A DNA stretch of 64,000 nt, taken from the IMG/VR virus record IMGVR_UViG_3300036766_000988, positions 124,001 through 188,000 of that record; one strand, given 5' to 3'. Numbering within the stretch: position 1 is the first letter of the stretch; each line of letters begins with the position of its first letter. Shown in pieces: positions 1,885 to 63,692 of this stretch. A program made the translations under genes and the position numbers. The notes beneath the pieces are model-generated. The model worked only from the letters and a program-made list of their open reading frames with translations. It was not told the origin of the DNA and did no database searches.

Positions 1885-2176
1885 GGGCTTTCGTTCGATA
1901 GGAGCTGTTTCGCACCGCCTCCATCATCATCAGGAAGTTCCAGCGCGTCTGCATGTACCCGTTCCATCGAGAAAGAGCCGCCCCACACCCACCCAAACCA
2001 CTGACCACCATCCATCCGCACTTGGGGGTGTACTTCATCGCCCACTGATCTGCGCCGTTGATCAGATCAGGATTGAATCCGAGCGACTGCTTGCCCAACA
2101 CAGCGCACATGTGATTGAACACCCCGAGGAGTTCGGTCTTCGTCACCGTCGGGACTGTAACGCGTACGCGTTTCAT
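1865..2176 (-). CDS. hypothetical protein
   Basis: 103 aa ORF whose start overlaps the clpX stop. Confidence 0.55.
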   Translation of the reverse strand: MKRVRVTVPTVTKTELLGVFNHMCAVLGKQSLGFNPDLINGADQWAMKYTPKCGWMVVSGLGGCGAALSRWNGYMQTRWNFLMMMEAVRNSSYRTKAHDNARV

Positions 2177-3450
2177 CCCGATGCCTGTTTGACGGTCTTC
2201 GGCTCCTTCGTGACGATCACGGCCTTGCCCTTCTTCTCGACGACTTCCTCGGTGATCCGGATGGCCTTGATGTTGGGCTGGCTGCGGCTCTCGAACGAGT
2301 ATGGCTGCAAAATCGACTCGACGATGCTCCGGAGCGCACGAGCCCCAGTGGGGCGCTTCTTGGCTTCACGCCCGATTGCCTTGAGGGCAGCCTCGTCGAA
2401 CTGGAGGTCGATGCCATCGAGGCCGAAGAGCGCCTTGAACTGACGGATGATCGCGTTCTTGGGCTCGGTCAGGATCTGGACCATCTCGCCTTCGGTCAGG
2501 TCGATGGTGGTGGTCAGGACGGGCAAACGGCCCATCACTTCGGGAATGAGCCCGAACTCCAAGACGTCTTCCTCGGTAACCGAGAGGTAGGTCTCCGAAC
2601 CCGAGAGCTTCACGCGCTCGACCGACCCGAACCCAAGGCTCGTATGCCGGTTCACACGCTTGCTGATGACCTCTTCGATGCCCGCAAACGAGCCCGCGCA
2701 GATGAAGAGCACGTTGGTCGTGTCCATCACGTCTACGGCGCCCCCCATCCCGACCCGCATGCCGTTGCCGCGAGGGACAGGTACCTTCGAGCCTTCGAGA
2801 AGCTTCAAGATGGCTTGCTGCACCATCTCGCCGCCAACGTCACGGTAGCCCGTGGCTCCGCGTCCCGACTTGCGGGCGATCTTGTCGAACTCGTCGATCA
2901 GGACGATGCCCCACTGGGCACGCTCCATGTCTCCCCCGGCTTCCTGCATGAGGCCTTGGAGCAAGCTCTCGACGTCATCCCCAACATAGCCCGCCGCCGT
3001 CAGCTTCGTCGCATCACCGACGAAGAACGGGACGTTGAGCATCTTGGCCAGAGCCCGGGCGATGTGGGTCTTGCCCGTGCCGCTCGGCCCCATCAGCAGG
3101 ATGTTCGACTTCTCGATCTCGACATCTCCGAGATCGACGCCCTGTCGGAGAGCTTCACGCCGCCGGTAGTGGTTGTAGATCGCGATGCTGACGTCGGTCT
3201 TGGCCTTGTCCTGCGCGATGACCCGCTCGTCCAGGTAGCTCTTGATCTCGACCGGCTTCTTGAGCGGTGCCTCGTTCTCCTTGGCCGCCTGCTCCTTCTT
3301 CTGCTCTGCCGTGAAGGCCTTGAACCCCTGATCGATGCAGCGGTTGCAGATGAAAGGCCCCTCATCCGATGCGGAAATGAGGCCTTTTACTTCGTTCCGC
3401 GGACGCTTGCAGAACGAGCACTGGGCGATCGTGCTCTTGGGAGGGCTCAT
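2173..3450 (-). CDS. clpX: ATP-dependent Clp protease ATP-binding subunit ClpX
   Basis: N-terminal C4 Zn finger CSFC...ICNRC, Walker A GPSGTGKT, Walker B IVLIDEFDKI, RDVGGEMVQQAILKLLEG, LGF loop, GRLP, TGARALRSIVE. Confidence 0.95.
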   Translation of the reverse strand: MSPPKSTIAQCSFCKRPRNEVKGLISASDEGPFICNRCIDQGFKAFTAEQKKEQAAKENEAPLKKPVEIKSYLDERVIAQDKAKTDVSIAIYNHYRRREALRQGVDLGDVEIEKSNILLMGPSGTGKTHIARALAKMLNVPFFVGDATKLTAAGYVGDDVESLLQGLMQEAGGDMERAQWGIVLIDEFDKIARKSGRGATGYRDVGGEMVQQAILKLLEGSKVPVPRGNGMRVGMGGAVDVMDTTNVLFICAGSFAGIEEVISKRVNRHTSLGFGSVERVKLSGSETYLSVTEEDVLEFGLIPEVMGRLPVLTTTIDLTEGEMVQILTEPKNAIIRQFKALFGLDGIDLQFDEAALKAIGREAKKRPTGARALRSIVESILQPYSFESRSQPNIKAIRITEEVVEKKGKAVIVTKEPKTVKQASG

Positions 3451-5086: not shown

Positions 5087-5110
5087 CGCTTCTGCGATGC
5101 TATCAAAGGC

Positions 5111-6268
5111 CTAAACGATCTCCGTAGGAGGTTCGAACGGGAGGTCTGGCACCTGGAGGCCGACGATCTGCTGGGGATCAACGTAGAGCGTGTAGCTCAA
5201 GGTGGCCTCGACTTCCCACCGGCTAAATACCTCCCGAGCTTGAACCGAATACCCTTCGGGCCCGATTTCGATAGCCCCCACGTGCCCAAGAAGACCTGTG
5301 GGCTCAACGTTCTCGACAGGCAGCAGTCCATCCGTGAACGGGGAGAACGTCGAGTAGGCATGGGGCGGGAGAATCCAGAAGTCTGCGTATTCGAGGGTCT
5401 TCCAGTTGAGGTCCGCCATGTTGATGGGCTTGCGGGGTTCTGCTGCCGACGCTACCCGGCGGGCGATCTCGCGCACCCAAGAGGTTCCAATCCTGGCGGC
5501 AAGAGCCCGGAGGCCGTCATGCCGAAGACTGAACGTAAGAGGATCCCCAATTGACTGTTGACTTCGAGCGACCGCCACCGAGGGAGGGAGCTGCATGAAC
5601 CCCTTTGGGGGTGTATCCCGGACCTCGAAGTGGTCGAGGAACAGCTTGGCTGCCCCCTTGGTCGCATCGAGCAGTCCTGGGAGACTGGTTCGGAGGTCGT
5701 CGATCATGCTGGCGCGTCCCGAGCGGGTGATGACCCGCAATCGGGGATCGCCTCCATCTCGAAGAGCCAGTGTTTGGGGGTACCTGGCTTGAACCCGGGC
5801 GAGCCGCTCGACGTCCTTCGCTTGGTCGAAGTAGTGAGAGACCAGGAAGCCTTCGAGGTCTGGACGCAACCGGGGGAGCGGTTGGGCCATCGAGCCGTCT
5901 TCTCTGGGGACAGGCGCTGGGGTCCAGATGTCGTGATCGGTAAACCGCGCAACGGCCCGACCCGTGACCCGGTTGATGACCAACATCGCGTCCCCAAGCT
6001 GGAAGTACTCGTCCGCCAAGTACTGAGCGACCTGGATGGCTTCCTCGGGGGTGCATTCGAGCACCCGCTCTAGCTCAGGTGTGATGGCGCCAGCAAGCTG
6101 CTCTGGCGTGCTGTTTTGCTGCCTGGCTTGCTCGAAAGAAGCACGCAAGGCCTGGTTCCGTTGAACCTCCCCACGAGCAGCCAACAGAGGGCCGGAGGCC
6201 GGTTGCGCAAGCGTCCTGACCTCGGGGGTGAACCGAGCCAACTCTTGGGAGGGAGGATTGGGCATCAT
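5111..6268 (-). CDS. hypothetical protein; C-terminal half weakly resembles an HK97-fold capsid protein
   Basis: The 385 aa ORF is clear; the fold guess rests only on a long helix (ALAARIGTSWVREIARRVA) and the C-terminal LYVDPQQIVGLQV. Confidence 0.35.
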   Translation of the reverse strand: MMPNPPSQELARFTPEVRTLAQPASGPLLAARGEVQRNQALRASFEQARQQNSTPEQLAGAITPELERVLECTPEEAIQVAQYLADEYFQLGDAMLVINRVTGRAVARFTDHDIWTPAPVPREDGSMAQPLPRLRPDLEGFLVSHYFDQAKDVERLARVQARYPQTLALRDGGDPRLRVITRSGRASMIDDLRTSLPGLLDATKGAAKLFLDHFEVRDTPPKGFMQLPPSVAVARSQQSIGDPLTFSLRHDGLRALAARIGTSWVREIARRVASAAEPRKPINMADLNWKTLEYADFWILPPHAYSTFSPFTDGLLPVENVEPTGLLGHVGAIEIGPEGYSVQAREVFSRWEVEATLSYTLYVDPQQIVGLQVPDLPFEPPTEIV

Positions 6269-6495
6269 TTGAGAATATGGTCCCAGGCCGAGAGACGATC
6301 ATGGTTATCGAACTCTTGTTGGTTGGTGTCTGCCTCGGCCTTCACAGCAGGCTCAGCAACTCTACCCCCATCCCCACCAATATAGGCCGCTGTGGGTGTG
6401 TAAACTCGACGCCGAAGGATTGCTTCGATGGCCCGCAACATGGCCTCAGCCTCAGCTTCCCCAGCAAAATGGATTTCGACTCCCTGATCTGTCAT
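6265..6495 (-). CDS. hypothetical protein ending in SAWDHILK
   Basis: 76 aa ORF; stop overlaps the next start. Confidence 0.55.
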   Translation of the reverse strand: MTDQGVEIHFAGEAEAEAMLRAIEAILRRRVYTPTAAYIGGDGGRVAEPAVKAEADTNQQEFDNHDRLSAWDHILK

Positions 6496-6720
6496 CCGAG
6501 CGAAAGGGATGAAAGAAGAACCCTGCTCTAGGACTTCGAAATGTAGGACAACACCCCCACGATCCTCGACACCATTGGATGTGAAGAGTATCGCGCTTGC
6601 GGTGCCTACAGCTCCCGAAGCGTATTCAACATGTTCAACATCGATGAACGTTGTTGTAGCACGATTTTCCCATTGATCCTCACCCTTGCGAGGTGGTCGA
6701 AATAGTTGTCCCCCAGGTTA

Positions 6721-7659
6721 TTACATCCTGGTAGACGGTCGATGCTGATGATGTCCATGTGTACCTCCGTCCTGGCTTACACCATCCAAGACGAGTCCTA
6801 GTTGCCTTTCCATGAAGGCCTCTACCGGACACGCATGGTAGGGCACCACCAAGAGCCGTACGCCATGGGCAGCGCACTTGACGACCTTCTCGGCGTCTCG
6901 CTGCTGCTGAGCCTCGAAGTCGGCCGTGGATTTGCCGAACCACAAGGCAGGACGGTAATGCTGGGGGCCTTGGTACTCGAAGGCCAGCCTCAGCTCCTCG
7001 TTGTACCCATCAAGCTGTAGCCTGGTGCCACTGCTTCTGCGCAACCATTCCGGATTAGCCTTGGGGAACGGCTTGCCGAAACGTTGCTCCAACCACGCTC
7101 TGCACGAAGCTTCACCGACCAGGTCGCGACAATAAGGGCACCATCGTTTGTTGTTCCGTACGTTGTTGGGCACAGCCTCCCAGGTGTGGCCCTTGGCACA
7201 CTGCCACTGAAGCTTCGTCTCACCGTTGATGTAGGTCTCGGAGAGGCACTTTCCTCCATGGGAGGCAGCCATCTCTTGCATGAGCCCGATGGTGAGCCGG
7301 GCCTTCCCGCTACAGTGGGGGCACCAGTGCTTCTGAATCGTGTTGGGCACTGCTTCCCAGACGTGCCCCTCAGCACACTGCCATCGTAGCTTGGTAGCAG
7401 TGTTGACGTACGTGGTTGAGAGACACTTCCCGCCATGCGCAGCAGCCCGAGCTTGCATGTCCTCCAGGGTGAGAGGAGCGTTGCCGCTACAGAAAGGACA
7501 CCACTGCCGTGGGACCATACTCGGTCGAGCCTCCCAAGTGTGTCCTTCGGAGCACTGCCACGTCAGGTTGGAATGAGCCTCGACGAAGACGATAGAGAGA
7601 CACAGGCCGCCCCGGAGAGCGGCACGAGCGTGCATGTCTTGGAGCGTAAGACGACCCAT
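6721..7659 (-). CDS. zinc-ribbon repeat protein with C-terminal PD-(D/E)xK nuclease (putative freestanding homing endonuclease)
   Basis: Three ~57 aa repeats GGxCLS...WQCxxGHxWEA...WCPxC, then LQLDGYNEELRLAFEYQGPQHY. Confidence 0.8.
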   Translation of the reverse strand: MGRLTLQDMHARAALRGGLCLSIVFVEAHSNLTWQCSEGHTWEARPSMVPRQWCPFCSGNAPLTLEDMQARAAAHGGKCLSTTYVNTATKLRWQCAEGHVWEAVPNTIQKHWCPHCSGKARLTIGLMQEMAASHGGKCLSETYINGETKLQWQCAKGHTWEAVPNNVRNNKRWCPYCRDLVGEASCRAWLEQRFGKPFPKANPEWLRRSSGTRLQLDGYNEELRLAFEYQGPQHYRPALWFGKSTADFEAQQQRDAEKVVKCAAHGVRLLVVPYHACPVEAFMERQLGLVLDGVSQDGGTHGHHQHRPSTRM

Positions 7660-7690
7660 ACCCTACGTCATTCTACCCTATCCCCGAACG

Positions 7691-7744: not shown

Positions 7745-9328
7745 TCAGTCCTCGGTCTTGACGAGCTTCAAAGCGCCGCTCTTGTTGGGGTCCGCAGCGA
7801 ACCGAGCCCGAACTCCCTCGTTCAGATCCGGATCGTACCCAACCCAGTCGATCACTTCCTTGACCTCGTCGACCATGGTCTTGAGGATGCGGGGCTTCGA
7901 CTCCAGCTCATCCGCGAGGATCGCCTCATCGAGCGTGGCCTTACCCGCCGCGAAGCTTTCGATCATCGCAGCTTTGATGCTCTGCTCGATCTCACGTCCG
8001 ACCATGCCCTGAGCCTTCTCGGAGAGCATCGCAAGATTGAAGTCCTCGATCCTCTGACCGACCTTGACGATGTGGATCTTGAGGATGTCGATGCGGTCTT
8101 CCTCCGACGGGAGGTCGAAGAAGAAACGCTGATCCATGCGGTTGACGAACTCGACCGGCAGGGTCTTGAGGCTGTTCGCCGTCATGGCGAGGCACACGGG
8201 AGCCTTGGTCTCCTGAAGCCACGTGCTCAGGATCCCGATGGTGCGGCTCGTCGTACCGGCGTCCGAGGCCCCACTCGACTGGCCGCCCGAGAGGGACTTC
8301 TCCGCTTCGTCGATCCAGACGATGCAGGGAGCGACCGCTTCGATGATCTTGAGCGCACGGTAGACGTTCGCCTCCGAATCACCGACGCCCGAGCTGCGGA
8401 GCCGACCCATCTCCAGCCCGACCACCGGGAGCCCCCAGGCGTTGCCCAGGGCCTTCGTGGTGAGGCTCTTGCCGGTACCCCAGATGCCGACGCACAGGAT
8501 GCCCTTCGGAGGCACGAGCCCGAACTGACGACCCTTCTCGCTCCACGAAAGAGCCGACTTCCGCGCCCAGTCCTTGAACCGGCCGACGCCGCCGACCGTA
8601 TCGAACGAGCACTCGTCCGTGTTGATGTACTGCACGAGGTCCGTCTTGCGGAGCTGCCGACGACGGAACTCCGAGATGTAGTCGGGGTCGATCCGCTTCG
8701 GGTTCACCGCATCCTTGCGGGTCTTCACGATGCTCTGGGCGATCGACATGTCGATTTCGTAGCTCGTGAGCCCCTTGAAGTGCTTGGCGGAGTCCTTCGG
8801 AGGCGTCATCCCGAGGTAACCGCAGGCCTCTTCGACGGTCGAGAGGATCTCTTCCGAGGAAAGCCCGTTGTCGTGAACGACCTCGATGTAGCGCGAGAGC
8901 TTCTCGGGCACGACCTTGCGGGCGCCGACGAAGATCAGAAGCTTGATCGTCCGGATGTCGTTGTGGACTTGGTGGATGATGTTGAGGATGCGCCGCTGGA
9001 CGTGGGGATCGTTGAGGTAGCGCTCTGGGTCCGTGATGACGTAGAAGTTCTGGTCGTCCTTCGGGTCGTCCTTGTAGACCTGGATGAGCGCAGTGTGGAT
9101 GTCCGCCGCGTCACGGTTCTCCTGGTGGAGACGCGAACCCCAATCCTTGATGAGCTGGTTGAGCGGGACCAGACCGAGCGCCGCATTGAAGACCCACACG
9201 CGATCGGCGAGCTTCTTCAAGGTGTCGCGAAGCGTGATCAAGAAGCGGTCTTCCTCGTCGGTGACGAAGTAGATGCACCGCGACAGGCTTCGGAGGTGGA
9301 ACAGCAGCTCTTCGTTCGTCTTGGCCAT
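7745..9328 (-). CDS. Ycf46-family AAA+ ATPase
   Basis: Degenerate N-terminal AAA-like domain; active domain with GIWGTGKS, IVWIDEAEK, MTANSLKTLPVEF..RMD..FFFDLP. Confidence 0.88.
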   Translation of the reverse strand: MAKTNEELLFHLRSLSRCIYFVTDEEDRFLITLRDTLKKLADRVWVFNAALGLVPLNQLIKDWGSRLHQENRDAADIHTALIQVYKDDPKDDQNFYVITDPERYLNDPHVQRRILNIIHQVHNDIRTIKLLIFVGARKVVPEKLSRYIEVVHDNGLSSEEILSTVEEACGYLGMTPPKDSAKHFKGLTSYEIDMSIAQSIVKTRKDAVNPKRIDPDYISEFRRRQLRKTDLVQYINTDECSFDTVGGVGRFKDWARKSALSWSEKGRQFGLVPPKGILCVGIWGTGKSLTTKALGNAWGLPVVGLEMGRLRSSGVGDSEANVYRALKIIEAVAPCIVWIDEAEKSLSGGQSSGASDAGTTSRTIGILSTWLQETKAPVCLAMTANSLKTLPVEFVNRMDQRFFFDLPSEEDRIDILKIHIVKVGQRIEDFNLAMLSEKAQGMVGREIEQSIKAAMIESFAAGKATLDEAILADELESKPRILKTMVDEVKEVIDWVGYDPDLNEGVRARFAADPNKSGALKLVKTED

Positions 9329-24592: not shown

Positions 24593-25306
24593 TCAGTCTG
24601 AAGTCCACCAAGCCGAACGAGCGGCCAATTTGACCTTGATCCGGTCGGCCTGCTCCTGGCCTTCCTGCCAGCGCGTCGGGTTGTTCTTCCGCTGGCTGTC
24701 ACAACCAGCCCAGGTCTCGGCAGCGCCCGCACAGGCGGCCTCGAAGGGCATCCCGCTCTTGAGACTGCGGAGGAAGTCCAGAGCCGAAGCCACGCAACCT
24801 CCGGCTCCTGGCACAGCGGTCGCCCCAAGAGCAGCGGCCCAGTTGGACTCCGTGATCGCAAACGCGTCCTCGAAGGTGCGGTAGGTCTCGACGATGCAGT
24901 ACGCGATCGTCACTGGATGGCCGGGGTAGACCGCGAACTCGCCGAGGATGTCCAGGTCGTGCCGGGTATCCTCCCCAGGGTAACGGGGCAGCCTCATGCG
25001 GATGTTGCGAGGAAGCTTCCCCGCCACATCGTAGGTGTCCATGGTGCCCGTGCGGTCGTAGCAGTACCAGCCGTGCAGCTCCGAAGAGTACTCGCTGTCG
25101 TGCTGCCGCCCGTAGAGCTTCGTCAGGCTGTTCGCCGTGTTGATGGCGTCCGCTCGGTTGAGCCAGAGCCGCAGGACGTAGTTTCCCCGAGTCACCCGCA
25201 CTTCCTGGGGCGGTCCCTTGGGAATATCCCGCACCGGCACACGCTTCTTGGCTGCCTTCTTGGGGGTCTTGGCTGCCTTCTTGGATGCGGGGCTCCCGGT
25301 CTTCAT
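24593..25306 (-). CDS. hypothetical protein with Lys-rich N-terminus
   Basis: Class A promoter 7 nt before the ATG; 237 aa. Confidence 0.6.
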   Translation of the reverse strand: MKTGSPASKKAAKTPKKAAKKRVPVRDIPKGPPQEVRVTRGNYVLRLWLNRADAINTANSLTKLYGRQHDSEYSSELHGWYCYDRTGTMDTYDVAGKLPRNIRMRLPRYPGEDTRHDLDILGEFAVYPGHPVTIAYCIVETYRTFEDAFAITESNWAAALGATAVPGAGGCVASALDFLRSLKSGMPFEAACAGAAETWAGCDSQRKNNPTRWQEGQEQADRIKVKLAARSAWWTSD

Positions 25307-25820: not shown

Positions 25821-28800
25821 TTACTCGGCGAGGATCCTGTCCCAAGCAGTTCTGGGCGGAGCTTTGTAGACGTAGATGAGCAGCACCCGCTGGTTGATCT
25901 CCTTGCCCAAAAGATTGTGGCGGATCCAACAGCTCTTCTTGTTGACCTTCGTGACTACGCCGAAACGCCGTCGTCCGTAGGCGTACGGGTAGAACGAAAC
26001 CCGCACCCCCACAGCGAGCCAGAGCAAGTCCATGGCTCAGTCGTGCGTTCCGATGTGCATGGTGCCGTGCTCGGGACAGGTGAACGAGTACATGCAGACG
26101 CAGGGAGAAGGCGTCGCCTTCGAGCAACAGGCGTGCTGCCGGATGTGTTCTTTGCGGCGGCACTCGTCCGAGCAGAGCTGCTGCTCGAAGCGCTTCACCG
26201 CCCACCGGAAAACCTCGTCCGCCACGGGTTGGCCGCAGCAGCGGCACGTGCCGTACTCCTGCATCGCCCTGACAAGCCAGAAGAAGCTCCTGTTCTCCGC
26301 CCGATACTCACCCCTGAACAGGTACTGGTAGGTGGCCAGGTCCGAACGGAGCTTCTTCACGTCGCCTTCGAGCATGCTGAGAAGAAGCAGCACCCGCTCG
26401 TGCATCTCCCCCTTCTTGATCTGCACGGTGACGCGCTTCGGCTTGCTGGAACGCTTCTTGGGAGTGGGCTTCTTGGGGGTCATGGTCTTCCTAGACATTA
26501 CACCTCTACTCCTCGTGTCAGCCGTTACCAGCTTGAGACGGCCCAGTTGAGCAGCGCACGGAGCTTCTCGGGAGCCACCAACACACGGTCACCGCCGTAG
26601 ACCTGAATCGCAAGATGAAGCCCCGACCTGGGAGCATTCACCGTGGTCCGGTACACGAACACTGTCGGGGACTCGCCCAGGAGGTCGTAGGTGGCGTCCG
26701 GCTTCTCCCACCAGAGAAGTAGGCGCTCCACGAGCGCCACGGGTAGCCTGACGTGGTGATGATCGACAGCGATGTGCAGCACCTTCTCGTCCGTCCCCCA
26801 CTCGATGGAGGCCGACTCGCCGGTCTCGAAACAGCAGGCCGAGCCCAAAGGCTGCTGGATCTCGGGGGTCCCCACCGGCTTCGGAGCCGTGTACCCACCC
26901 AAAATCGTGTGGTTGAGGTCGTTCATGACAGTACTACGCCTCCAAAAGTAGGAGTTCAGCTAGGGAACGCCGCCGCCCGCTCCAAGAGCTGGAGAGCTTC
27001 CTCGCATTCGGCCGCCTTCGCCAGCAAAAGCTGGTCAACCTTGCTGCCGACCCCACGAGGAGCCGCTTCGCGGTAGATCTTGGCGTAGCTGCGGAGTAGG
27101 TCCAACGCAGCGTTGGGGCGAACGACGGGGGCAGCAACGGGCTTGGTGTCCATGAGGGTACTACGCCGCCACTTCTTGGGATTCAGCCCGACTTCTTGCG
27201 CTCCCCAGGGAAGTGCCAGCTATCGAGGAGCTTCTGAGGCACCGGCTGGTCGCCAAACATCCGAAGGATCTCGGCCCTGGCCCGGTGACACCGAGCCTCC
27301 TCCCGGTAATACGCCTGACGCTCCCAGTCGGAGAAGATGGCAGCCGCTTCGGCACAGGTCTTGGGTAGGGACGGAGTGCCCATCAGGTGGCCTCTTGAGG
27401 GTTGGGGAGGTTGCTCACGATGTGCGAGACCAACCAGTCGGCCGCGTCGTACATCCCGAGCCGGGACGCCACGAGCCGCAAATCCTCCAACTGGTCGTTC
27501 AGCGAATCCTGACGTTGCGATTGCCGAGGCAGAGCGCGGACAAGAGCGAGAAAGTCTTCGCGGGCCATTTACGCCGCCTTCCTGAGCGCATGGTAGCGCT
27601 GCTGGATCTGGCCGTTCCGGTGCGTCATGCGGGGACTCACCGACCCCAACATGTCGAGCAGGTCTTCACGGGGCCAGCTCCGTAGCTCGGGGAACTCGGC
27701 AAGTAGACGATCGAGGGCGGTGTCCATGAAACTACTACGCCGCCTGGAAGCCCGGTTCAGCGGGCCTTCGCGAGCTTGACGAAGAGCTTGAGCGCCTCGT
27801 CGAACGGAAGGGTGTTGAGAACCACCATCTGGGGATCGAACGGGACAGAGTGTCCGGGCAGGTTCGCCTGGAAAAGCTTTCCGTCACGAACGAAGACGAG
27901 CTTCTTCTTGAAGAGCCTCTTGAGGTCGCGCTCCGCCAGCCAGGTGTCCAGAAGCTCACCGAAAAGAAGCTCGGGGGACTGGGGGAGCGGCCCGAAGGCG
28001 TGATCGACCGGAGGCAGCGTCTTGCAGTAGACCCTGATCTCGTCGGCAAGACTTCCAGGACGAATCAGGTCCGCCCCACCGTGACCGTCGTTCTCGACCG
28101 TCCCGCGCTTCACCCCATCAACCCAGACATCCGCTGCAAAAGCAGACGTCTCGTGGGAAAGTCGCGCGTTGTAGGAGATGCGACGAAGTTCGATCTTCAT
28201 AGGGGTACTACGTCTTGGGTACTGCCGGTTCAGCCAAAATGTTGACCAGTAACGTAGGGTCGCCCGCCTGGGTCCGATGATGCCTGTACTCCCCCGCAGC
28301 CACGGAACGCGTCGAGCCAGACTCCTGCCACCCACAACAGCAGATGGCCGTCCAGCAACGTTCCGCAAGCGACCGCTCGCCGTTTGATTCCAGCGACACC
28401 AACCGGTGCTTCACGCGATGGCCTGAGCCCAGAGGTCGAGCTTGAGTACCAGATCCAAGGTCGCCTGCTCGAACGTGTCCCCCGAGCCCGTGATGTTCGA
28501 CGCTTTGCAGCGGCTCCCACGAAGCTTCACCGGAATACTCATTGTGCAGCCCCAGGCGGCTCACCCGGAACTCGGGCTCACCCAACGGGCCAGGCACCGG
28601 CAGAAGCCGAGGATGAAGACGTACGGCTTCCTCGATCTTGAGGAACAGCGGTTCCAGTTCAGCAGCGGTGGCCATGCAGCTACTACGTCACCATGACCCA
28701 CAGTTCAGCTCGTCCAGCAAGGGTGGAATCCCTACCGCCGGGCGGACAACCAGATGAGGCCGACCGCCAGAAGCCCCACCAGCAAGAGCCCGAAGTCGAC

Positions 28801-30375: not shown

Positions 30376-30693
30376 TTAGTAGGCGCCGAGCTTGTCCCAC
30401 CAGACGCGGGGCTGCTTGCGGGACTTGCGGGGAGCGCGGATGGCCACCGGGGGCGGCGAGGTGCCCTGAACCGCCAGCACCTTGCCGGACAGCACGGTCT
30501 GCTGACGGAACGCTTCGAGGTGCTTGCACGAGCGGTTCATCGGATGGTTCTTCTGGAACCGCCAGCTTGGACACGTGCAGTAGATGTTGCCGTCCTTGCC
30601 CAGACGAACCTCGTGAACGTGCAGCGGGTTCGACTTCGAGGCGAAGGTGGCGAGGAGCGTGGGGCGAAAGACTGGAGTCGTCGTCTTGTCCAT
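30376..30693 (-). CDS. SWIM zinc-finger protein
   Basis: HEVRLGKDGNIYCTCPSW...CKHL; class A promoter. Confidence 0.75.
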   Translation of the reverse strand: MDKTTTPVFRPTLLATFASKSNPLHVHEVRLGKDGNIYCTCPSWRFQKNHPMNRSCKHLEAFRQQTVLSGKVLAVQGTSPPPVAIRAPRKSRKQPRVWWDKLGAY

Positions 30694-34129: not shown

Positions 34130-34429
34130 TCAGGCGTCGTCCTGGATCAACCGCTCCCAGCAGGTAGGGGCTCCCAAGTGGGCCAGGGTAGCTTCGGCCA
34201 ACTTCAGGACCCGGCGGGCCTCCTGGGGGCGTTCCAGGATGGCCAGTTCATCCGGGTAGGTGTAGATAGAATCTCGACCCTCAAGAGCTTCGATCAAGCG
34301 ACTGCATCGAAGTTCCGCCAACGCGACCCATTGTTGGCATTCCTCGACCCACAGACGGGCTAGCTCAAGTTGTTGAGCTGCCGTGGGGTCTTGCCCCAAT
34401 AGGCGGGTCAACAATTCATCCCGCTCCAT
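34130..34429 (-). CDS. hypothetical helical protein ending in TCWERLIQDDA
   Basis: 99 aa ORF in a packed run. Confidence 0.55.
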   Translation of the reverse strand: MERDELLTRLLGQDPTAAQQLELARLWVEECQQWVALAELRCSRLIEALEGRDSIYTYPDELAILERPQEARRVLKLAEATLAHLGAPTCWERLIQDDA

Positions 34430-41815: not shown

Positions 41816-42109
41816 TCATTTGGGCACTCCGTCGTCGGTCAACGACGCAGGGGCATGTCCGCAGTAGGGGCACGCTCCCACGGCCGGGAACCGTCCGGCG
41901 AGAAGGTCATCGAGCGACACGTTGACGAATCTCGACAGACGGAACGCGAGCAGCGGGGTGACCGTGCGGCCCTTCACGATGTTCGTGAGCGTCCTCGGCT
42001 GGAACCGCAGCGTCTCTGCGAGCGGGATCCAGCCGCCGAACCGCGTCCGAAGGAACCGCAAGGCGGCACGTACCCGCACTTGCTCTTCCCGCGTGAGATC
42101 AAGGTTCAT
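41816..42109 (-). CDS. XRE-like HTH protein with C-terminal CxxC
   Basis: ATG overlaps the transposase stop (TGATG); LAETLRFQPRTLTNIVKG...LSRFVNVSLDDLL; CPYC. Confidence 0.65.
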   Translation of the reverse strand: MNLDLTREEQVRVRAALRFLRTRFGGWIPLAETLRFQPRTLTNIVKGRTVTPLLAFRLSRFVNVSLDDLLAGRFPAVGACPYCGHAPASLTDDGVPK

Positions 42110-43356
42110 CACGAGCCTCCCGCCGCCATCAACGGCGGCTCGCCCCAGAACGACGCGTCGATCCCCAACTCGTAGATCGACTGCACCAGCACACGGATGT
42201 TGTGGCAGAGCACCTTCATGTAAATTTCGCTGACCTGCCCCTCGAAGGACTTCGCCCGTACCGAGGATCCGAGCACGCGCTTCACCGAACTGAACGTCGC
42301 CTCGGTCAAGCTGCGCTTGTGGTAGTGCTCCAAGAACGTCGGCCGGTTGTACGTGTAGAACGCGAACAAGCGGTTCCACAGGTCATCGTTGGCGCTCGCC
42401 TTCGAGTTCGACTTGAAGGGGACGAACGGCTCCGCGCCCGCCTTCACGATGGCCTTAAAGTTCTCCCGCGAAAGGTAGCCCATGTCGGCCGAGACCTCGC
42501 GCATCGCGAAGTTCTTCCCGGTCTGTTCGATGAGCCCAGGAAGGAACGGTGAGTCATGCGCGTTGCCTGGCGTGACCTCGGCGCCGGTGATGATCTGCGT
42601 CGTCACGCCGATCATCATGTGGAGCTTGAGCCACTTCTTCTCCCTACGATCCTTCCCCCACTTCTGATCGTGCCACCTGACGTAGCCCTTCGTGGCGATC
42701 CCGGTGCCATCGGCGGCGAAGTCCACCTCGACGGTGCGGAGCGGCTTTGCGCTTTCTTCGATCAGACGACGAAGCACCGGCACGGTCTCGGGCTCCCGCA
42801 TGATGCGGAAGACAGTGTTCGGATGCGGCACCACGTCGGTGAGGCCGCGCTCTTGACACGAACGGATGTCGCTCACGGCGCGGTCGCCGGAGAACAGCGT
42901 GAAGGTCTTGACCCCTGCGGCGAAGATCACGTCGGAAAGCGGGAGCGACGGGCGGCCGTTGCCCTTGTAGCAGGGCTGTTGGACGCCGTCGCAGAGCGCA
43001 CGGAGAAGCTTCTCGAAGATGTCCTTCTCGTTCATCCTCGCCTTGCGGTAGGCAGGCCAGTTCTGCGCGTACGTGATGCGCTTCTCTTCGGTCACGACGT
43101 TCCCGTCCGGCAACGTGATCTCACGGCGGACGATCAAGACCGCGTAGAGGTGCTTGCAGCGGTGCCCTGCCCCATGCTCTTCCGCGTCCGGGCACGAGCA
43201 GGTGCCCGCCACGGGATCCACGAAGTAGCTCCCCGAGTTCTTAGACTGCGAGGGAACGAGGTATTTGCCTTCGAGAACCTGCCGGATCTGCTTGCCCTTA
43301 CCTTGCACGATGGCGAGGCCGCGTTGCGCTCGGTAGTCGATGGCTGCGGTATCCAT
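42109..43356 (-). mobile_element. DDE transposase (IS4/IS5-like DDE_Tnp_1 type) with N-terminal SWIM zinc finger
   Basis: CSCPD..CKH; FAADGTG, KWLKLH, HDSPFL, VSADMGY, YHKRSLTEATFSSVKR. Confidence 0.88.
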
Positions 43357-56572: not shown

Positions 56573-56875
56573 CTAGACGGCGGGCCGCTGCACCCGAGCC
56601 CAACAGGTCTGGGCTCGACGGGCTTCGATACGTTCTTGGTAGAAGCCGATGCTCTTTTGGAGCTTCACCACGTGCTGCCTGAGCAAGGCCCGGATGTGGT
56701 AGTTGCATCCGAGTTGGGTCCTCAGTCGACGTCGAGTCGACCCTCGATGAAGCTTGCTGGCCGAGGCCTCTTGTCGGGAGATCCGCTGTTCGAGGTCGCG
56801 GAGTTCGTTCGAGCGCTTCCGCAACAGATCGTGCGCAGCGTTGAGCTTCTGCTCCCAGAACGTGAGATCTCGCAT
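56573..56875 (-). CDS. 100 aa coiled-coil protein, paralog 1
   Basis: MRDLTFWEQKL...FYQERIE..R..CW. Confidence 0.7.
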   Translation of the reverse strand: MRDLTFWEQKLNAAHDLLRKRSNELRDLEQRISRQEASASKLHRGSTRRRLRTQLGCNYHIRALLRQHVVKLQKSIGFYQERIEARRAQTCWARVQRPAV

Positions 56876-57047: not shown

Positions 57048-57350
57048 CTACAACATCGGCCGCTGGATCACGTTCCAACAGCTCCGTCGCATCCGGGTTT
57101 CGATGCGCTCTTGGTAGAACACAGCCTGCTGCTCAAGACGTGCGATCTCACGCCGCTGCCGGGCCCGCATGCGGTACGCCACGACGAGCTGCGCCCGTAA
57201 CCGACGCTTCTCCGAACCCTTCGGAAGCTTGAGTGCGGCAGCCTCATGACGTTGAATGACGTTGTGAAGGGTTTTCTGGTTTTCGTGAAACCGCTTCAAG
57301 CGACCCTGACAGTCCTTGAGCTTCTGCTCCCAGAAGGTGCGGTCTCGCAT
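57048..57350 (-). CDS. 100 aa coiled-coil protein, paralog 2
   Basis: MRDRTFWEQKL...FYQERIE..R..CW. Confidence 0.7.
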   Translation of the reverse strand: MRDRTFWEQKLKDCQGRLKRFHENQKTLHNVIQRHEAAALKLPKGSEKRRLRAQLVVAYRMRARQRREIARLEQQAVFYQERIETRMRRSCWNVIQRPML

Positions 57351-57360: not shown

Positions 57361-57423
57361 GCCCGCCTAGTTTACGGTTCCCAGCGGGCGGAGAACAGAT
57401 GCTTGTGCCCCGCTCACAAGCGA
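57361..57423 (-). repeat. structured dispersed element, copy C
   Basis: Same conserved blocks; ends ~10 nt before the ATG at 57350. Confidence 0.8.
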
Positions 57424-58214
57424 TCCCAACAATAGCGGCTCCCGATGTCCAGGTCGGCCCCCGATACCCTTCCACAAGAGATGTCTTGCCAAATGATGGG
57501 GTAAGACAATTTGCACCGAGGCATCAGAAAGCTTCCCCGACCACCAGTGGCGGGCATCTCTTCTCTACACCGGTTGTCCGAGAAACCCTACGAAGGACGG
57601 GCTCAATTTGGTTTGTTCAAGGTCTCGAAAGTAACCGGTTGTCCATCCCATACTTTCGGAATGTGCCTCTGCTCATCGAACAGAAGTACAGAGCGCACGA
57701 CGTGGATTCCTGAGCGGGAATCCACACTTATCCTTGTCCACTTCCAGTCTCGGGGGATGATCTTCATGAGATAGCGTAACAAGCGTGCGGCAGAGGATCC
57801 CGTAAGTTTCACCGCCATCAACCCTTCCTTGGGTATCTGAGCCTGATGTGCCTCAGCACCCCCAACCAGTAGGTGGTGGTGAGCCGCCCGCTGGCCGAAC
57901 TCTCGTGGTACAATCCCCCATCGTCGGGGTCGAAGTGGATCCAGTCCCCGTGGTCGACGGGCAGCCGATGCTCCCGCACACCAGACATCCCATGGGGTCT
58001 GCGAAGGCTGCGGGCAGCTTCCAGTCTGGACATCGGCATGGGGCTCCTTGCTCACCGGTAGGGCGTTGGGGGCTGGGGTCTCAAGACCGCTTCGAGGATA
58101 GCGCGGAAATCAGCCGTCTCTCGGATGTAGGTGATCGCCAAGCGAAGCTCGTCCACGGACAAGCTCATAAAGCCGCCTTGCTTCGCTTTCCAGTAGAGTT
58201 CTTCGCGATGGGAT

Positions 58215-61118: not shown

Positions 61119-61745
61119 CTATACGCACTCATCTCCGCCACGATTGGCCCATTGCGGCAACTTAACCTCGCGAAGAATGTTGAACTTTTTGCCGCCTGAG
61201 AGTGCTGAGAAGACCTTGTGGTAGGGCTCGAACTTCGGGTCACGGGCGGAGGCCTCTTTGAGCACCTTGACGGCCTTGAAGAAGCGATGCCGAACGCGTC
61301 CCTGGGTGAGCTTGAGCTGATTGGCGACTTCGCTTTGGCATGTTGTCTTCCACATGCCGACCAGGATTGAGACGTCGATTGGCTTGAAGATGTCAGGTAG
61401 GTCGCGCCGGATGTCCTCTTCCTGGATTTGGGGGATCGATAGGAGGAACTTGATCCTCTTGAGCCCACGGTCGAGTCGATAGCTGATGGCCGCTTGGGTC
61501 ACGTTGAAGATGACTGCGATGTCGGCCTGACGCTTCTTTTCGACGAAGTAGAGGTAGATGAGGTCTGCTTCCCGTTGGGGAATCCGGTCGAGTAGAGGAG
61601 CAATGCGCTCTTCGTAACTCATCCCGCCGGATAGGAGGGACTGGACCTCTTCGGTATCGTCGTCCTCCTCGGCGTCCTGATCGGGAACTTGGAAGCGGTT
61701 CGAAAGCTGTGCAGGATCGATAGGGATGACATACCCAGTGCTCAT
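61119..61745 (-). CDS. protein with two tandem sigma70 region-4-like HTH domains
   Basis: LLDRIPQREADLIYLYFVEKKRQADIAVIFNVTQAAISYRL and CQSEVANQLKLTQGRVRHRF. Confidence 0.7.
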   Translation of the reverse strand: MSTGYVIPIDPAQLSNRFQVPDQDAEEDDDTEEVQSLLSGGMSYEERIAPLLDRIPQREADLIYLYFVEKKRQADIAVIFNVTQAAISYRLDRGLKRIKFLLSIPQIQEEDIRRDLPDIFKPIDVSILVGMWKTTCQSEVANQLKLTQGRVRHRFFKAVKVLKEASARDPKFEPYHKVFSALSGGKKFNILREVKLPQWANRGGDECV

Positions 61746-61759
61746 CGTGCCCTCCATCG

Positions 61760-63691
61760 TTAGGCTCCGTCCCCAGCCGGGAAGAATACCGGGAGGATCG
61801 ATTCGACTTTCACATCTACATCTAGGAGCCGCTGGGAAGCGACATTTTGATCTGGGTCTGGCGTAGTGATGGTGAGCTGAAGGTCTTGCTGGAGGGTCAT
61901 CAGCTCCACATTGAGTCGAACCTGTTGCTCGGCTGCACGAAGCTTCTGGTACTGCACCGGAGTCAGTCCCGCCAGGTTCGACGAGAAGATGCCGTCCACC
62001 GTACCATAGAGTTTCAGGAGCTTCGAGGCCATTTTCGGGCCGAAGCCGGGGACACCGGGGATGTTGTCAGACGTATCACCGTCGATGGCTCGGAAATGGA
62101 CCATCCTGTCCGGCGTCGTCCCGTATTCCTTCTCGACCAGTGCGGCGTTGTAGAGCTTCTCTTTGCCCGCCCCCACGGCAGGAACCCACACCTGATCTGT
62201 GGCTGAAACGAGCTGCAAAAAGTCCCGATCTGTCGAGATAACGACGTTTTGCTGACCTCGGTACGCCCCTCGGACGAGCGTCGCCACGACGTCATCGGCC
62301 TCTTCCTCGACGTTCCACGCCTGCTTGATCCCGAGCAAGGGGAGGGTTTCGCGAAGCCAGTGGAACTGATCCCACTCGTCGTGAGCTGGGTAGAACGTCC
62401 GCCCCCGAAGACGATTCGCCTTATAGGACGTAAACATTCGGGTCCGCCGCTGGCTCGACCCGTCCCATACGACGGTGATCTTTCCCCCTGGGAAGCGTTT
62501 GAGGAACGAGCCGAGGCTCCGGAGAAAGCCGACGATGGCCCCCGTAGGACGGCCCTTCGAGTCCTTGAGCGTATCCAATCCAGGGCTCATGGAGCATCGA
62601 ACTGCGAGGTTGTGGCCGTCGATGATGATGTTGTCGGTCATGGTCTTTCCCAAAAGGGTCCTCTCGATGGCCTCTACTTCATCATTCAGCACGGCAACTT
62701 TGCCGAGCATCTCCTCAAACCACATCCACTTGAGGTACTGCGCTTCGATCGTCGCAAGCCTGTAGGAGGGCGGCGTGAAGAGAGGCAGGATTCCCAGTAG
62801 ACGGTCTGCCCACCGGTGAAGCACCTCGAAGGATCGGAAGTTTTCTCGTATCGGGGTGGGGTCGAGCTGCTTTTCGGCAGCCTTCACCATCCCCACCAAT
62901 TGGGTACCTCGCTGGTACCATCCGTGAAGCTTGTGCGCTGCTACGAAGGCACGAGCCACGGGGCGTGCATCCAAAGGTTCCCGCTCGACCACCTGTAGCT
63001 CGGCTTGCAACCCCAGCTCTTTGGCGATCCACCCGTCAAACTGATCCACGATCTGGAACCGTTGTCGGATCGGAACGATGCGGGCGTCGTCGAAGAGCAC
63101 GAAGGGCTTGACCTTCTTGAGCCAATCCCGGAGCGCCGCCAGCCTGGGCAGGAAGCTCGTTCGAGGAGCCTTCTCGACGAGCCGTAGGAATGACCTCGGT
63201 AGGGTGACGATCGACTCCTTGGAACGGAGTTTCACGTGGATCTGAACGCTTAGGTTCTCGGGGATGTCCTCGATGACCACCGCTCGGATTTGACGGTAGG
63301 GCCCGCTGGTGACTAGCACCGTATCGCCGACGTCAATTCCTTGGTCTTCCTTGTCGTGGATCTGGGACTTGAACCGGTCGATATCGGCATCGGTCGCGCA
63401 CGCAAGCTTCCTGACGGCACGGTAGCCTGAGCGGTCGATCTTGGTGATGACCGATTGCACGTAGCGGGAGCCTTCGAGCTTGTAGTACTTCTCGTCCGGC
63501 TGGGCGCGCTTGATGAAGGCGTACCCATCCACGAGGTAGTTGATCAGCCGATCCTCTCCCACGTTGGTCACCGACACGGGGAGGTAGATCTCGGCGTCCC
63601 GTATCTGATGCCGAATCGAGGCCCGAATGAAGTCGGGATCTTCGCCCTCAGCCTTCGGACTCAGCTCAAGAACAACCCATTCGTTCGCCAC
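61760..63691 (-). CDS. NusG/RfaH-like (NGN+KOW) domain fused to a 5'-3' exonuclease (PolI N-terminal/FEN type)
   Basis: WVVLEL...LVDGYAFI...VGDTVLVTSGPY; IIIDGHNL, VVWDG, YKANR, EADDVVATL, STDRDFLQL, GDTSDNIPGVPGFGPKMA. Confidence 0.82.
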   Translation of the reverse strand: MANEWVVLELSPKAEGEDPDFIRASIRHQIRDAEIYLPVSVTNVGEDRLINYLVDGYAFIKRAQPDEKYYKLEGSRYVQSVITKIDRSGYRAVRKLACATDADIDRFKSQIHDKEDQGIDVGDTVLVTSGPYRQIRAVVIEDIPENLSVQIHVKLRSKESIVTLPRSFLRLVEKAPRTSFLPRLAALRDWLKKVKPFVLFDDARIVPIRQRFQIVDQFDGWIAKELGLQAELQVVEREPLDARPVARAFVAAHKLHGWYQRGTQLVGMVKAAEKQLDPTPIRENFRSFEVLHRWADRLLGILPLFTPPSYRLATIEAQYLKWMWFEEMLGKVAVLNDEVEAIERTLLGKTMTDNIIIDGHNLAVRCSMSPGLDTLKDSKGRPTGAIVGFLRSLGSFLKRFPGGKITVVWDGSSQRRTRMFTSYKANRLRGRTFYPAHDEWDQFHWLRETLPLLGIKQAWNVEEEADDVVATLVRGAYRGQQNVVISTDRDFLQLVSATDQVWVPAVGAGKEKLYNAALVEKEYGTTPDRMVHFRAIDGDTSDNIPGVPGFGPKMASKLLKLYGTVDGIFSSNLAGLTPVQYQKLRAAEQQVRLNVELMTLQQDLQLTITTPDPDQNVASQRLLDVDVKVESILPVFFPAGDGA

Positions 63692-63692
63692 G

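What the first reader, a model, noticed from the sequence alone, without database searches (positions are those of the whole stretch)
6265..6495. Shared C-terminal motif [ST]-[AC]-W-[DE]-[RH]-[IL] on many unrelated small proteins
Seen: otherwise unrelated ORFs end in similar Trp-centred peptides: 6265..6495 RLSAWDHILK*, 25821..26033 PRTAWDRILAE*, 34130..34429 PTCWERLIQDDA*, 56573..56875 QTCWARVQRPAV*, 57048..57350 RSCWNVIQRPML*, and looser 30376..30693 PRVWWDKLGAY* and 24593..25306 RSAWWTSD*. Inference: a short linear motif (docking tag or degron) for a common hub, for example the phage ClpX or AAA ATPase, or a compartment-targeting signal. I know of no described function for it.
Basis: partly seen in the sequence, partly recalled or inferred. 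Interest (0 to 1): 0.62.

Follow-up and report, generated by a model that had tools for sequence, protein, structure and literature searches.

The report
Shared C-terminal docking tag in huge phages
A clade of huge bacteriophages puts the same short aromatic-plus-acidic peptide at the end of dozens of unrelated accessory proteins. The peptide is a real, selected and portable docking tag; each phage lineage has its own flavour of it, and its receptor is still unknown.

Summary
The window lies in a 252-kb fragment of a huge phage. Three of the seven listed ORFs (6265..6495, 25821..26033, 34130..34429) carry a strong tag, P-T-A-W-[E/D]-R-[L/I]-L-x-D-D. Two are borderline and two are not members.

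Four of those seven lie outside the window.

Related huge phages carry the same tag in lineage-specific flavours, with W, Y or F as the aromatic residue. One complete 435-kb relative ends about 85 of its 589 proteins in P-[S/T]-R-F-[D/E]-R-[D/E]-E-V-L. Codons vary synonymously, so selection acts on the peptide. The protein bodies are mostly unrelated. Orthologues keep the tag and switch flavour with the genome. In a kinase-like protein the tag sits at the N-terminus in two phages and in an internal loop in another. It therefore behaves as a portable short linear docking motif for a co-evolving receptor.

The receptor is not identified. My best guess (about 0.4) is the phage's own AAA+ unfoldase system, chiefly ClpX with its zinc-binding N-domain. 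The one complex prediction gave no answer. The sliding clamp is unlikely, because the phage flap endonuclease carries a separate, invariant PIP-like tail. I found no description of this tag.

The parts
6265..6495 (-). 76-aa ORFan protein ending in a short form of the tag (S-A-W-D-H-I-L-K; tag codons about 6268-6297).
   Evidence: Sequence. Matrix score 23.7, Trp 6 residues from the C-terminus. No Pfam family. No homologue among 5.8 billion proteins other than itself.
25821..26033 (-). 70-aa protein ending in P-R-T-A-W-D-R-I-L-A-E (tag codons about 25824-25856).
   Evidence: Matrix score 28.6. No Pfam family.
34130..34429 (-). 99-aa protein ending in P-T-C-W-E-R-L-I-Q-D-D-A (tag codons about 34133-34168).
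   Evidence: Matrix score 30.7. No Pfam family.
30376..30693 (-). 105-aa protein with a C-x-C...C-x-H (SWIM-like) pattern and a borderline tail (V-W-W-D-K-L-G-A-Y, no acidic run).
   Evidence: Matrix score 6.0, top 0.5% of interior Trp sites. Residues 35-95 resemble the N-terminal part of the phage ATP-dependent ligase at G000 43587-44873. That ligase carries a tag-like stretch about 296 residues from its C-terminus (matrix score 17.1), upstream of its catalytic domains (residues 220-423).
56573..56875 (-). 100-aa protein with a borderline tail (T-C-W-A-R-V, then Q-R-P-A-V); paralogue of 57048..57350.
   Evidence: Score 5.5. 46% identical to its neighbour 57048..57350.
57048..57350 (-). 100-aa paralogue of the previous ORF; its tail S-C-W-N-V-I is not a member by score.
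   Evidence: Score -0.9.
57414..57557 (-). Uncalled 47-aa ORF next to the paralogue pair, ending Y-C-W-D-R-L; a possible third degenerate copy.
   Evidence: ORF listed. Matrix score 15.1, Trp 4 residues from the end.
24593..25306 (-).
   Evidence: Score -0.8.
2173..3450 (-). Phage ClpX homologue (425 aa): C4 zinc-binding N-domain, AAA+ module with a GYVG pore loop, and an L-G-F loop aligned to the ClpP-docking loop. Leading receptor candidate; binding was not shown.
   Evidence: Pfam zf-C4_ClpX and AAA_2. Alignment with relatives. Present in every relative examined. The complex test was uninformative.
7745..9328 (-). 527-aa tandem-AAA (Cdc48/p97-like) ATPase with no separate N-domain. Second receptor candidate and the marker used to find relatives.
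   Evidence: Pfam AAA. phrog_8638. AlphaFold model, mean pLDDT 69. Foldseek matches to p97/Cdc48/Rix7 over about 530-580 alignment columns, E about 1e-14, but TM-scores only about 0.3.
61760..63766 (-). 668-aa 5'-3' exonuclease (FEN-like). Its C-terminus carries a separate PIP-like motif (E-x-[I/M/V]-L-x-x-F-[F/H]) that is conserved in most relatives whatever their tag flavour.
   Evidence: Pfam 5_3_exonuc. C-terminal alignment across eight phages.

Best explanation
SHOWN. The tails are a genuine short linear motif under purifying selection. With the aromatic residue as position 0, the consensus is Pro at -3, Thr/Ser at -2, a small or aliphatic residue at -1, Trp (Tyr or Phe in other lineages) at 0, Asp/Glu at +1, Arg/His at +2, Leu/Ile at +3, Leu/Met at +4, and an acidic run from +6. 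The aromatic residue usually lies 6-13 residues from the C-terminus, behind a Pro-rich linker. The motif is attached to dozens of otherwise unrelated accessory proteins in a clade of huge phages. Each phage uses one flavour, and orthologues change flavour with the genome.

INFERRED. T-x-x-E is a helix N-capping box, and positions 0, +3 and +4 form one hydrophobic face. The tag is therefore read as a mini amphipathic helix plus an acidic tail that plugs into a groove on one receptor. That receptor co-evolves with the tag.

LIKELIEST RECEPTOR (about 0.4, not shown). This is the phage's own AAA+ unfoldase system. The first choice is the zinc-binding N-domain of the phage ClpX (about 0.3). The alternative is the Cdc48-like tandem AAA ATPase (about 0.1). 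Tagged proteins would then be tethered to the unfoldase, which keeps a loop aligned to the ClpP-docking loop. They would act either as substrates that are cleared, or as SspB-style adaptors that bring bound host targets to it.

I put the generic layer, a docking tag for a common receptor, at about 0.85.
For: - Enrichment and position.
- Selection at peptide level: Arg is encoded by both CGN and AGG, and Ser by both TCN and AGC.
- Unrelated bodies: 52 tagged proteins from four phages fall into 41 BLAST-unrelated clusters. The bodies include DUF3268 plus a Top1-type zinc ribbon, a kinase-like protein, an ATP-dependent ligase and a Tudor-like protein.
- Relatives and flavours.
- Orthologues keep the tag. 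The DUF3268 family does so in G000, G006, G007 and G009. The A3 family does so in every phage sampled, and all 11 database homologues fetched end in the tag at 25-53% body identity.
- Flavour switches inside three orthologous families.
- Portability: N-terminal in one phage group, an internal loop in another.
- Pro-rich linker: 9-19% Pro upstream of the tag against about 6% in the proteome.
- For ClpX specifically: ZBD, GYVG and L-G-F loops are present and the gene is conserved in all relatives. The architecture, domain then flexible linker then short C-terminal peptide, is that of the SspB adaptor, which tethers itself to ClpX (PMC9963277). By hand count on rows, the phage-clade ZBD region is net positive (about +3 to +4), whereas bacterial-type ClpX in other viral contigs is about -3. 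That charge is complementary to an acidic tag, but the argument is weak.
Against: - There is no direct evidence for any receptor.
- The ClpX-ZBD dimer plus zinc plus 41-residue tail prediction scored ipSAE 0.02 and 0.00. The tool rules this 'no answer', neither for nor against.
- ClpX shows no excess of substitutions private to the phage with the divergent R-F flavour: 11 of 63 (P = 0.88). The tandem AAA shows none either: 24 of 104.
- Known ClpX ligands (ssrA L-A-A, SspB L-R-V-V-K) are non-acidic; this is from my own knowledge.
- No ClpP family match was found in G000, G006, G007 or G009, all incomplete records. The ClpP-family gene of the complete relative G002 sits directly after a 477-aa ORF with overlapping stop and start. 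I read that as a head-maturation arrangement, by inference.
- A kinase and a ligase carrying the tag internally fit a recruitment hub better than a degradation signal.
Confidence: 0.4

Rival explanations
1. The tag docks on some other receptor, host or phage, and concentrates accessory proteins at one place. Candidates include RNA polymerase, the replication or recombination factory, or a scaffold or condensate. Degradation is not involved.
For: - The tag works from N-terminal and internal positions in a kinase-like protein and sits about 296 residues from the C-terminus of an ATP-dependent ligase.
- Tagged bodies include zinc-ribbon and SWIM-like DNA-type domains.
- The always-tagged A3 family has a Tudor/KOW-like N-domain whose nearest folds include the RNA-polymerase-binding domains of UvrD/PcrA and CarD. 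The Z scores are only about 7, which the tool's own notes treat as non-specific.
- Flavour differences between phages would also follow from different hosts.
- One core protein of unknown function (G000 29011-29613) has an excess of substitutions private to the R-F-flavour phage: 12 of 19, P = 2e-4.
Against: No candidate receptor was identified. No phage PDZ_2 domain was found in five genomes, and no SSB family match in G000. The strict distance of the aromatic residue from the C-terminus in G002 (7 residues in 43 of 64) suggests the free end is read, which is more typical of unfoldase or pocket recognition.
Confidence: 0.3
2. The tag is a capsid- or virion-loading signal. It would work like encapsulin cargo-loading peptides or the HK97 protease targeting tail, so that many small proteins are packed into the very large head and injected with the DNA.
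For: The architecture is the same as in encapsulin cargo: a folded domain, a flexible Pro-rich linker and a roughly 10-residue C-terminal peptide (PMC7355545). Lineage-specific co-variation is expected if the receptor is the phage's own shell or scaffold. The cargo set is fast-evolving and accessory, like anti-defence proteins (226 of 380 G000 proteins have no homologue in five relatives).
Against: In the complete genome G002 the tagged genes form long same-strand blocks of small genes across the genome ends (0-60 kb and 386-435 kb), away from the putative head module near 274 kb. I read that layout as early-gene-like, by inference. The ClpP-family protein of G002 carries no tag. The sequence does not resemble known cargo peptides.
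Confidence: 0.15
3. The tag is a sliding-clamp-binding tail, like the acidic-hydrophobic C-termini of T4 gp43, gp33 and gp55 or a PIP box.
For: The phage encodes a clamp (G000 192604-193911, phrog_947) and clamp-loader subunits. Positions 0, +3 and +4 give the same hydrophobic spacing as a PIP core. A ligase, a classic clamp client, carries the tag.
Against: The flap endonuclease of these phages ends in a separate, canonical PIP-like motif. It is conserved in most of them whatever the tag flavour, so the clamp's ligand appears to be that motif. The clamp shows no excess of substitutions private to the R-F-flavour phage. About 85 clients in one phage would swamp a replication clamp (inference).
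Confidence: 0.04
4. There is no function of its own. The tails would be the conserved remnant of one large paralogous family, a by-product of translation signals (arrest peptide, ribosome-binding site of the next gene), or chance.
For: About 30 of the tagged G002 proteins are tandem paralogues of about 130 aa. In the window, 56573 and 57048 are paralogues. In G002 many stops overlap the next start, and the Glu-Glu codons resemble a Shine-Dalgarno core.
Against: - 41 unrelated clusters and different Pfam domains.
- Lengths from 70 to 856 aa.
- The tag sits at other positions in the kinase-like protein.
- Codon families vary.
- The distance to the stop varies from 6 to 13 residues.
- By composition, about 1e-3 strict matches are expected in tails outside the window, against 4 seen (hand calculation).
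Confidence: 0.03

Closest known systems
SspB adaptor tail (XB peptide) and other ClpX N-domain ligands
   Same: A short peptide at the very C-terminus, behind a long flexible linker, that tethers a variable cargo-binding body to one AAA+ machine (PMC9963277). The phage encodes a ClpX with that N-domain.
   Different: The known XB peptide is basic and hydrophobic (L-R-V-V-K, from my knowledge), whereas this tag is aromatic and acidic. Here dozens of unrelated proteins carry it rather than one adaptor. Binding was not shown.
ssrA-type C-terminal degrons
   Same: A C-terminal tag shared by many proteins. It may be bipartite, with an upstream element plus the extreme end; the G002 flavour ends in V-L with fixed spacing.
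   Different: It is encoded in the genes rather than added by tmRNA. In G000 most ends are acidic or polar. The tag also occurs at N-terminal and internal positions.
Clamp-binding tails (T4 gp43/gp33/gp55; PIP box; bacterial Q-L-x-L-F)
   Same: Unrelated proteins share a short hydrophobic-acidic C-terminal peptide for one hub (PMC7225939, PMC11139829; the T4 facts are from my own knowledge).
   Different: These phages have a separate PIP-like tail on their FEN that does not vary with tag flavour. The number and kind of clients also differ.
Encapsulin cargo-loading peptides and the HK97 protease capsid-targeting tail
   Same: A C-terminal peptide of about 10 residues after a flexible linker, sufficient to direct different proteins to one HK97-fold shell (PMC7355545).
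   Different: There is no sequence similarity. The tagged genes are not next to the putative head genes, and the ClpP-family protein is untagged.
SSB C-terminal tip (D-D-D-I-P-F) and T7 gp2.5/gp4 acidic tails
   Same: An acidic run that often ends in a hydrophobic residue with a free carboxylate, read by a basic or hydrophobic pocket.
   Different: There the tail sits on the hub and the pockets on the clients; here the tail is on many clients. No SSB family match was found in G000.

Membership tests
ClpX N-domain tethering peptides (SspB XB type) | A ClpX with a C4 zinc-binding N-domain is present in the same system | tested here: met
   Pfam zf-C4_ClpX plus AAA_2 at window 2173..3450; conserved in all relatives examined.
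ClpX N-domain tethering peptides (SspB XB type) | A short peptide at the C-terminus behind a flexible linker | tested here: met
   The aromatic residue lies 6-13 residues from the end. The 16 residues upstream are 9-19% Pro against about 6% in the proteome.
ClpX N-domain tethering peptides (SspB XB type) | The peptide binds the ClpX N-domain | tested here: inconclusive
   Complex prediction returned 'no answer', ipSAE 0.02 and 0.00. This is not evidence either way.
ClpX N-domain tethering peptides (SspB XB type) | Basic-hydrophobic consensus L-R-V-V-K | tested here: not met
   The tag consensus is aromatic and acidic.
ssrA-like C-terminal degron (C-motif 1) | Non-polar last residues with a free carboxylate, at a fixed position at the end | tested here: not met
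   G000 tails mostly end in acidic or polar residues, and the spacing varies from 6 to 13. This feature is met only by the G002 flavour, which ends in V-L with Phe at -7 in 43 of 64. The tag is also found internally.
Sliding-clamp-binding motif (PIP box or beta-clamp motif) | Consensus Q-x-x-[LIM]-x-x-[FY]-[FY] or Q-L-[SD]-L-F | tested here: not met
   The tag consensus differs. A PIP-like motif exists separately on the FEN and is conserved across tag flavours.
Encapsulin or HK97-type capsid-targeting peptide | Carried by proteins known to enter the procapsid (maturation protease, scaffold) or encoded next to the shell gene | tested here: not met
   The G002 ClpP-family protein has no tag. Tagged genes cluster at the genome ends. 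Virion content cannot be tested here.
Ribosome arrest peptides (SecM/TnaC type) | Fixed spacing between the key Trp and the stop or arrest codon; a leader-like small ORF upstream of a regulated gene | tested here: not met
   The spacing is 6-13 residues. Hosts are 70-856 aa proteins. N-terminal and internal copies exist.
Sortase or exosortase-type C-terminal sorting signals | The motif is followed by a hydrophobic transmembrane segment and a basic tail | tested here: not met
   The tails end within 13 residues of the aromatic residue and are acidic.

The most novel reading that the evidence does not exclude
A clade of huge phages runs a proteome-wide addressing system. A genome-encoded peptide of about 12 residues, with a different flavour in each lineage, marks 3-14% of all phage proteins for one receptor. 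Most of the marked proteins are fast-evolving accessory proteins. The boldest reading the data allow is a library of tagged adaptors or effectors that a phage-encoded unfoldase or protease uses to seize and destroy host proteins. An alternative bold reading is a cargo-loading code for the giant capsid. Either would be a new organising principle for phage host takeover, and a ready-made orthogonal tag-receptor pair.
Probability: 0.35. Interest if true: 0.9.

Novelty: new variant of a known kind. Interest (0 to 1): 0.8.

Why it matters
Most genes of huge phages are ORFans with no handle for study. A shared and clearly selected tag groups dozens of them into one functional class per genome. It also predicts a single receptor that can be fished out with a synthetic peptide.

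If the receptor is the phage ClpX, this would be the first phage-encoded tag-and-unfoldase system that acts on the phage's own proteome or on host targets. If the receptor is the capsid, it would be a cargo-loading code for a virus. In either case the lineage-specific flavours (W, Y or F; Leu-Leu or acidic at +3/+4) are natural orthogonal tag-receptor pairs and a clean case of motif-receptor co-evolution.

In practice, the tag is a simple sequence rule for annotating accessory or effector genes in this clade.

Tried and rejected
- **Complex prediction.** I folded the phage ClpX N-domain (residues 1-64, two copies, with zinc) with the last 41 residues of a canonical tagged protein. The result was 'no answer' (ipSAE 0.02 and 0.00, controls not run). 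It is not evidence for or against binding.
- **DNA repeat or promoter explanation.** Rejected because synonymous and cross-family codons vary.
- **Near-identical phages.** A megablast of window 5000-12000 against GenBank phages found none.
- **Family scans.** Pfam scans of the 17 G000 candidates and Pfam plus PHROG scans of 10 G002 tagged proteins were empty, except for the DUF3268 plus zinc-ribbon protein.
- **Exact back-translated pattern.** A search for P-T-A-W-E-R-L-L in IMG/VR gave one hit, in an overlapping frame inside a large gene. I treat it as chance.
- **Candidate receptor families.** A ClpP family search found no match in G000, G006, G007 or G009. Searches for beta-clamp domain 3 and SSB found none in G000. 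A PDZ_2 search found none in five phages.
- **Host inference.** A search for GroEL relatives in bacterial genomes found nothing usable.
- **Always-tagged A3 family.** Pfam gave nothing. The language-model and atlas search stayed below 0.9. The model is poor (pLDDT 61), and only a Tudor/KOW-like N-domain appears, at Z about 7.
- **Lineage-private substitution scan.** This was meant to find a receptor that changed together with the R-F flavour. Only one unknown 200-aa protein stood out, and neither PDB sequences nor the atlas explained it.
- **Literature.** Five full-text searches found no description of this tag.
Full report
**What the window is**

The window is bases 124,001-188,000 of a 252,183-bp IMG/VR virus record. 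CheckV rates the record 53% complete, and its G+C is about 60%. The record is a huge phage. It encodes:
- a family A DNA polymerase, a RecD2-type helicase and an NAD-dependent ligase;
- GroEL, a UvsX-like recombinase, a DnaB-type helicase and clamp-loader subunits;
- a processivity factor;
- a ClpX homologue and a second AAA ATPase.

No gene caller was installed, so I wrote a three-periodic Markov caller. It gave 380 genes covering 82% of the genome, and it called all seven ORFs of the finding.

**Checking the observation**

The seven ORFs end exactly as quoted. The codons under the shared residues differ between copies, so no DNA repeat underlies them.

A looser pattern hits the last 20 residues of 15 of 4,946 stop-to-stop ORFs, and 14 of the 15 are called genes. 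An unsupervised count of gapped tripeptides in C-termini against interiors puts T.W.R, T.W..L and W-E-R at the top (P = 5e-9 to 4e-7).

Aligning 17 tails on the Trp gives this consensus: Pro at -3, Thr at -2, Ala at -1, Trp at 0, Glu/Asp at +1, Arg/Lys/His at +2, Leu/Ile at +3, Leu at +4, and Asp-Asp at +6/+7. The Trp lies 6-13 residues from the end.

By this matrix, three window ORFs are strong members: 6265..6495, 25821..26033 and 34130..34429. Two are borderline and lack the acidic run: 30376..30693 and 56573..56875. Two are not members: 57048..57350 and 24593..25306. ORFs 56573 and 57048 are paralogues of each other.

**The bodies are unrelated**

Of the 17 G000 candidates, only one has Pfam domains, DUF3268 plus a Top1-type zinc ribbon. 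The anchor protein 6265..6495 has no homologue at all in 5.8 billion proteins. With the tails removed, 52 tagged proteins from four phages fall into 41 BLAST-unrelated clusters.

**Relatives**

Homologues of the AAA ATPase led to 20 huge-phage contigs of up to 529 kb. I fetched seven of these records in full and one in part. Each has the tag in its own flavour:
- G005, G006 and G007: P-T-[A/V]-W-[E/D]-x-L, then an acidic run that often ends in I, L, V or F; 12-18 tails each.
- G009: S-A-W-x-R-L-M...D-D.
- G001, a complete 529-kb genome: [S/T]-L-W-E-R-L; about 20 tails.
- G010: K-[S/T]-[V/I]-W-[E/D]-H-[L/M]; at least 13 tails.
- G008: T-[A/V]-Y-D-[H/L]-[L/I/V]...D-D; four tails.

G002 is the striking case. 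It is a complete 435-kb genome with terminal repeats and has no W tails. Instead, 85 of its 589 proteins carry R-F-x-R in their last 18 residues (84 counted against 2.45 expected, P = 1e-95). The full form is P-[S/T]-R-F-[D/E]-R-[D/E]-E-[V/P]-[L/I/V], and the Phe lies exactly 7 residues from the end in 43 of 64 cases. In these tails Arg is encoded by both CGN and AGG, and Ser by both TCN and AGC, so the peptide is what is conserved.

The R-F core is absent from the tails of the W and Y genomes, and the W matrix finds nothing in G002 tails. Intermediates such as R-F-[T/E]-R-[L/I]-[L/F]-x-D-D occur in further contigs and link the two forms.

**Selection, equivalence and portability**

*Orthologues keep the tag.* The DUF3268 family does so in G000, G006, G007 and G009 at 42-51% identity. 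A core family of about 170 aa (alignment A3) carries the tag in every phage where I found it. That includes G000 at 243027-243551, where the aromatic residue is Phe. All 11 database homologues that I fetched end in the tag, although their bodies are only 25-53% identical. So do the roughly 22 further copies found next to phage-type ClpX genes.

*The flavour follows the genome.* Three orthologous families carry a W or Y flavour in some phages and the R-F flavour in G002.

*The tag is portable.* A kinase-like protein has it at the N-terminus in G006 and G007. In G000 (235768-236724) it sits inside an inserted loop, where it gets the highest matrix score in the genome. An ATP-dependent ligase (G000 43587-44873) has it about 296 residues from the C-terminus, upstream of the catalytic domains at residues 220-423.

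*A linker precedes it.* The 16 residues upstream of the tag are 9-19% Pro, against about 6% in the proteome.

Together these results show a portable short linear motif read by something that differs between phages.

**How it probably works**

This part is inference. T-x-x-E is a helix N-capping box, and positions 0, +3 and +4 lie on one face of a helix. The tag therefore looks like a one- to two-turn amphipathic helix followed by an acidic tail, often with a hydrophobic last residue. The AlphaFold model of the A3 protein puts a short helix exactly on the motif, but at low confidence.

**Which receptor?**

*Sliding clamp: unlikely.* The phage's flap endonuclease (window 61760..63766) ends in a canonical PIP-like motif, E-x-[I/M/V]-L-x-x-F-[F/H]. 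That motif is conserved in most of the phages examined, whatever their tag flavour.

*Phage ClpX: the best candidate.* The ClpX at window 2173..3450 has the zinc-binding N-domain, a GYVG pore loop and an L-G-F loop aligned to the ClpP-docking loop. It is present in all relatives examined. The tagged proteins share the architecture of the SspB adaptor, which tethers itself to ClpX (PMC9963277). The phage-clade N-domain region is net positive, whereas bacterial-type ClpX is net negative; this is a hand count on rows and is weak support.

*Tandem AAA ATPase: a second candidate.* The ATPase at window 7745..9328 is a Cdc48/p97-like tandem AAA without a separate N-domain.

*What the tests gave.* The single complex prediction allowed (ClpX N-domain dimer, zinc and a 41-residue tail) gave 'no answer'. 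A scan for substitutions private to G002 at otherwise invariant columns singled out neither ClpX, the tandem AAA, the clamp nor GroEL. It singled out only an unknown 200-aa core protein, G000 29011-29613, which I could not characterise.

*Capsid loading: still possible.* It is disfavoured by the position of the tagged genes. In G002 they sit in long same-strand blocks of small genes across the genome ends. The ClpP-family protein of G002 is also untagged.

**Verdict**

I place it as a new variant of a known kind, a hub-docking short linear motif. Its scale is unusual, up to 14% of a phage proteome, and its lineage-specific co-variation is clear. The receptor, and therefore the function, remains open.

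**Limits**

Gene calls are home-made. Relatives other than G001 and G002 are incomplete records.

Noticed in passing
Relative G002 (loci L033-L054), e.g. L052:6459-16127 and L033-L035: A complete 435-kb relative ends about 85 of its 589 proteins in P-[S/T]-R-F-[D/E]-R-[D/E]-E-V-L. These include a tandem array of about 30 paralogues of about 130 aa at 386-402 kb, and a same-strand block at 0-60 kb across the terminal repeat.
   Followed up: yes
window 61760..63766 (C-terminal codons about 61763-61807): The FEN-like 5'-3' exonuclease (with an N-terminal extension that has a weak KOW match) ends in a PIP-like clamp-binding motif, E-x-[I/M/V]-L-x-x-F-[F/H]. It is conserved in most of the eight phages aligned.
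   Followed up: partly
G000 235768-236724 (L011:7771-8724, minus strand) and its G006/G007 homologues: A protein-kinase-like protein (sub-threshold Pfam Pkinase match) carries the tag in an inserted loop in G000, after the D-W-S triplet that may correspond to the kinase DFG motif, but at the N-terminus in G006 and G007.
   Followed up: partly
G000 29011-29613 (L003:9014-9613, minus strand): A core 200-aa protein of unknown function has a marked excess of substitutions private to the R-F-flavour phage at otherwise invariant columns (12 of 19, P = 2e-4). It is a lead for the receptor; no fold or family was found.
   Followed up: partly
window 42109..43356: A DDE transposase (DDE_Tnp_1) with an N-terminal SWIM zinc finger: an insertion-sequence-like gene inside the phage genome.
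   Followed up: no
window 6721..7659: A 312-aa protein with repeated treble-clef zinc-finger domains (DUF4379, with a weak CapR-homology match). It lies between the AAA ATPase gene and the tagged ORF 6265..6495.
   Followed up: no
window 61119..61757: A 212-aa protein with a sigma-70 region 4 domain at residues 55-103. It is very conserved across the clade (63-68% identity) and may be a phage sigma-like factor.
   Followed up: no
G000 219740-220382 and 219282-219863 (minus strand): An ORF carries a good tag 56 residues before its stop and overlaps the next called gene by about 120 nt in another frame. This could be a gene-call problem, a frameshift or a fused gene.
   Followed up: no
G000 213935-215596 (L010:5938-7596) and 209598-211402: The phage encodes its own GroEL (phrog_5725, E = 4e-147) and clamp-loader delta and delta-prime-like subunits next to a 768-aa gene that I could not reference because it spans two loci.
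   Followed up: no
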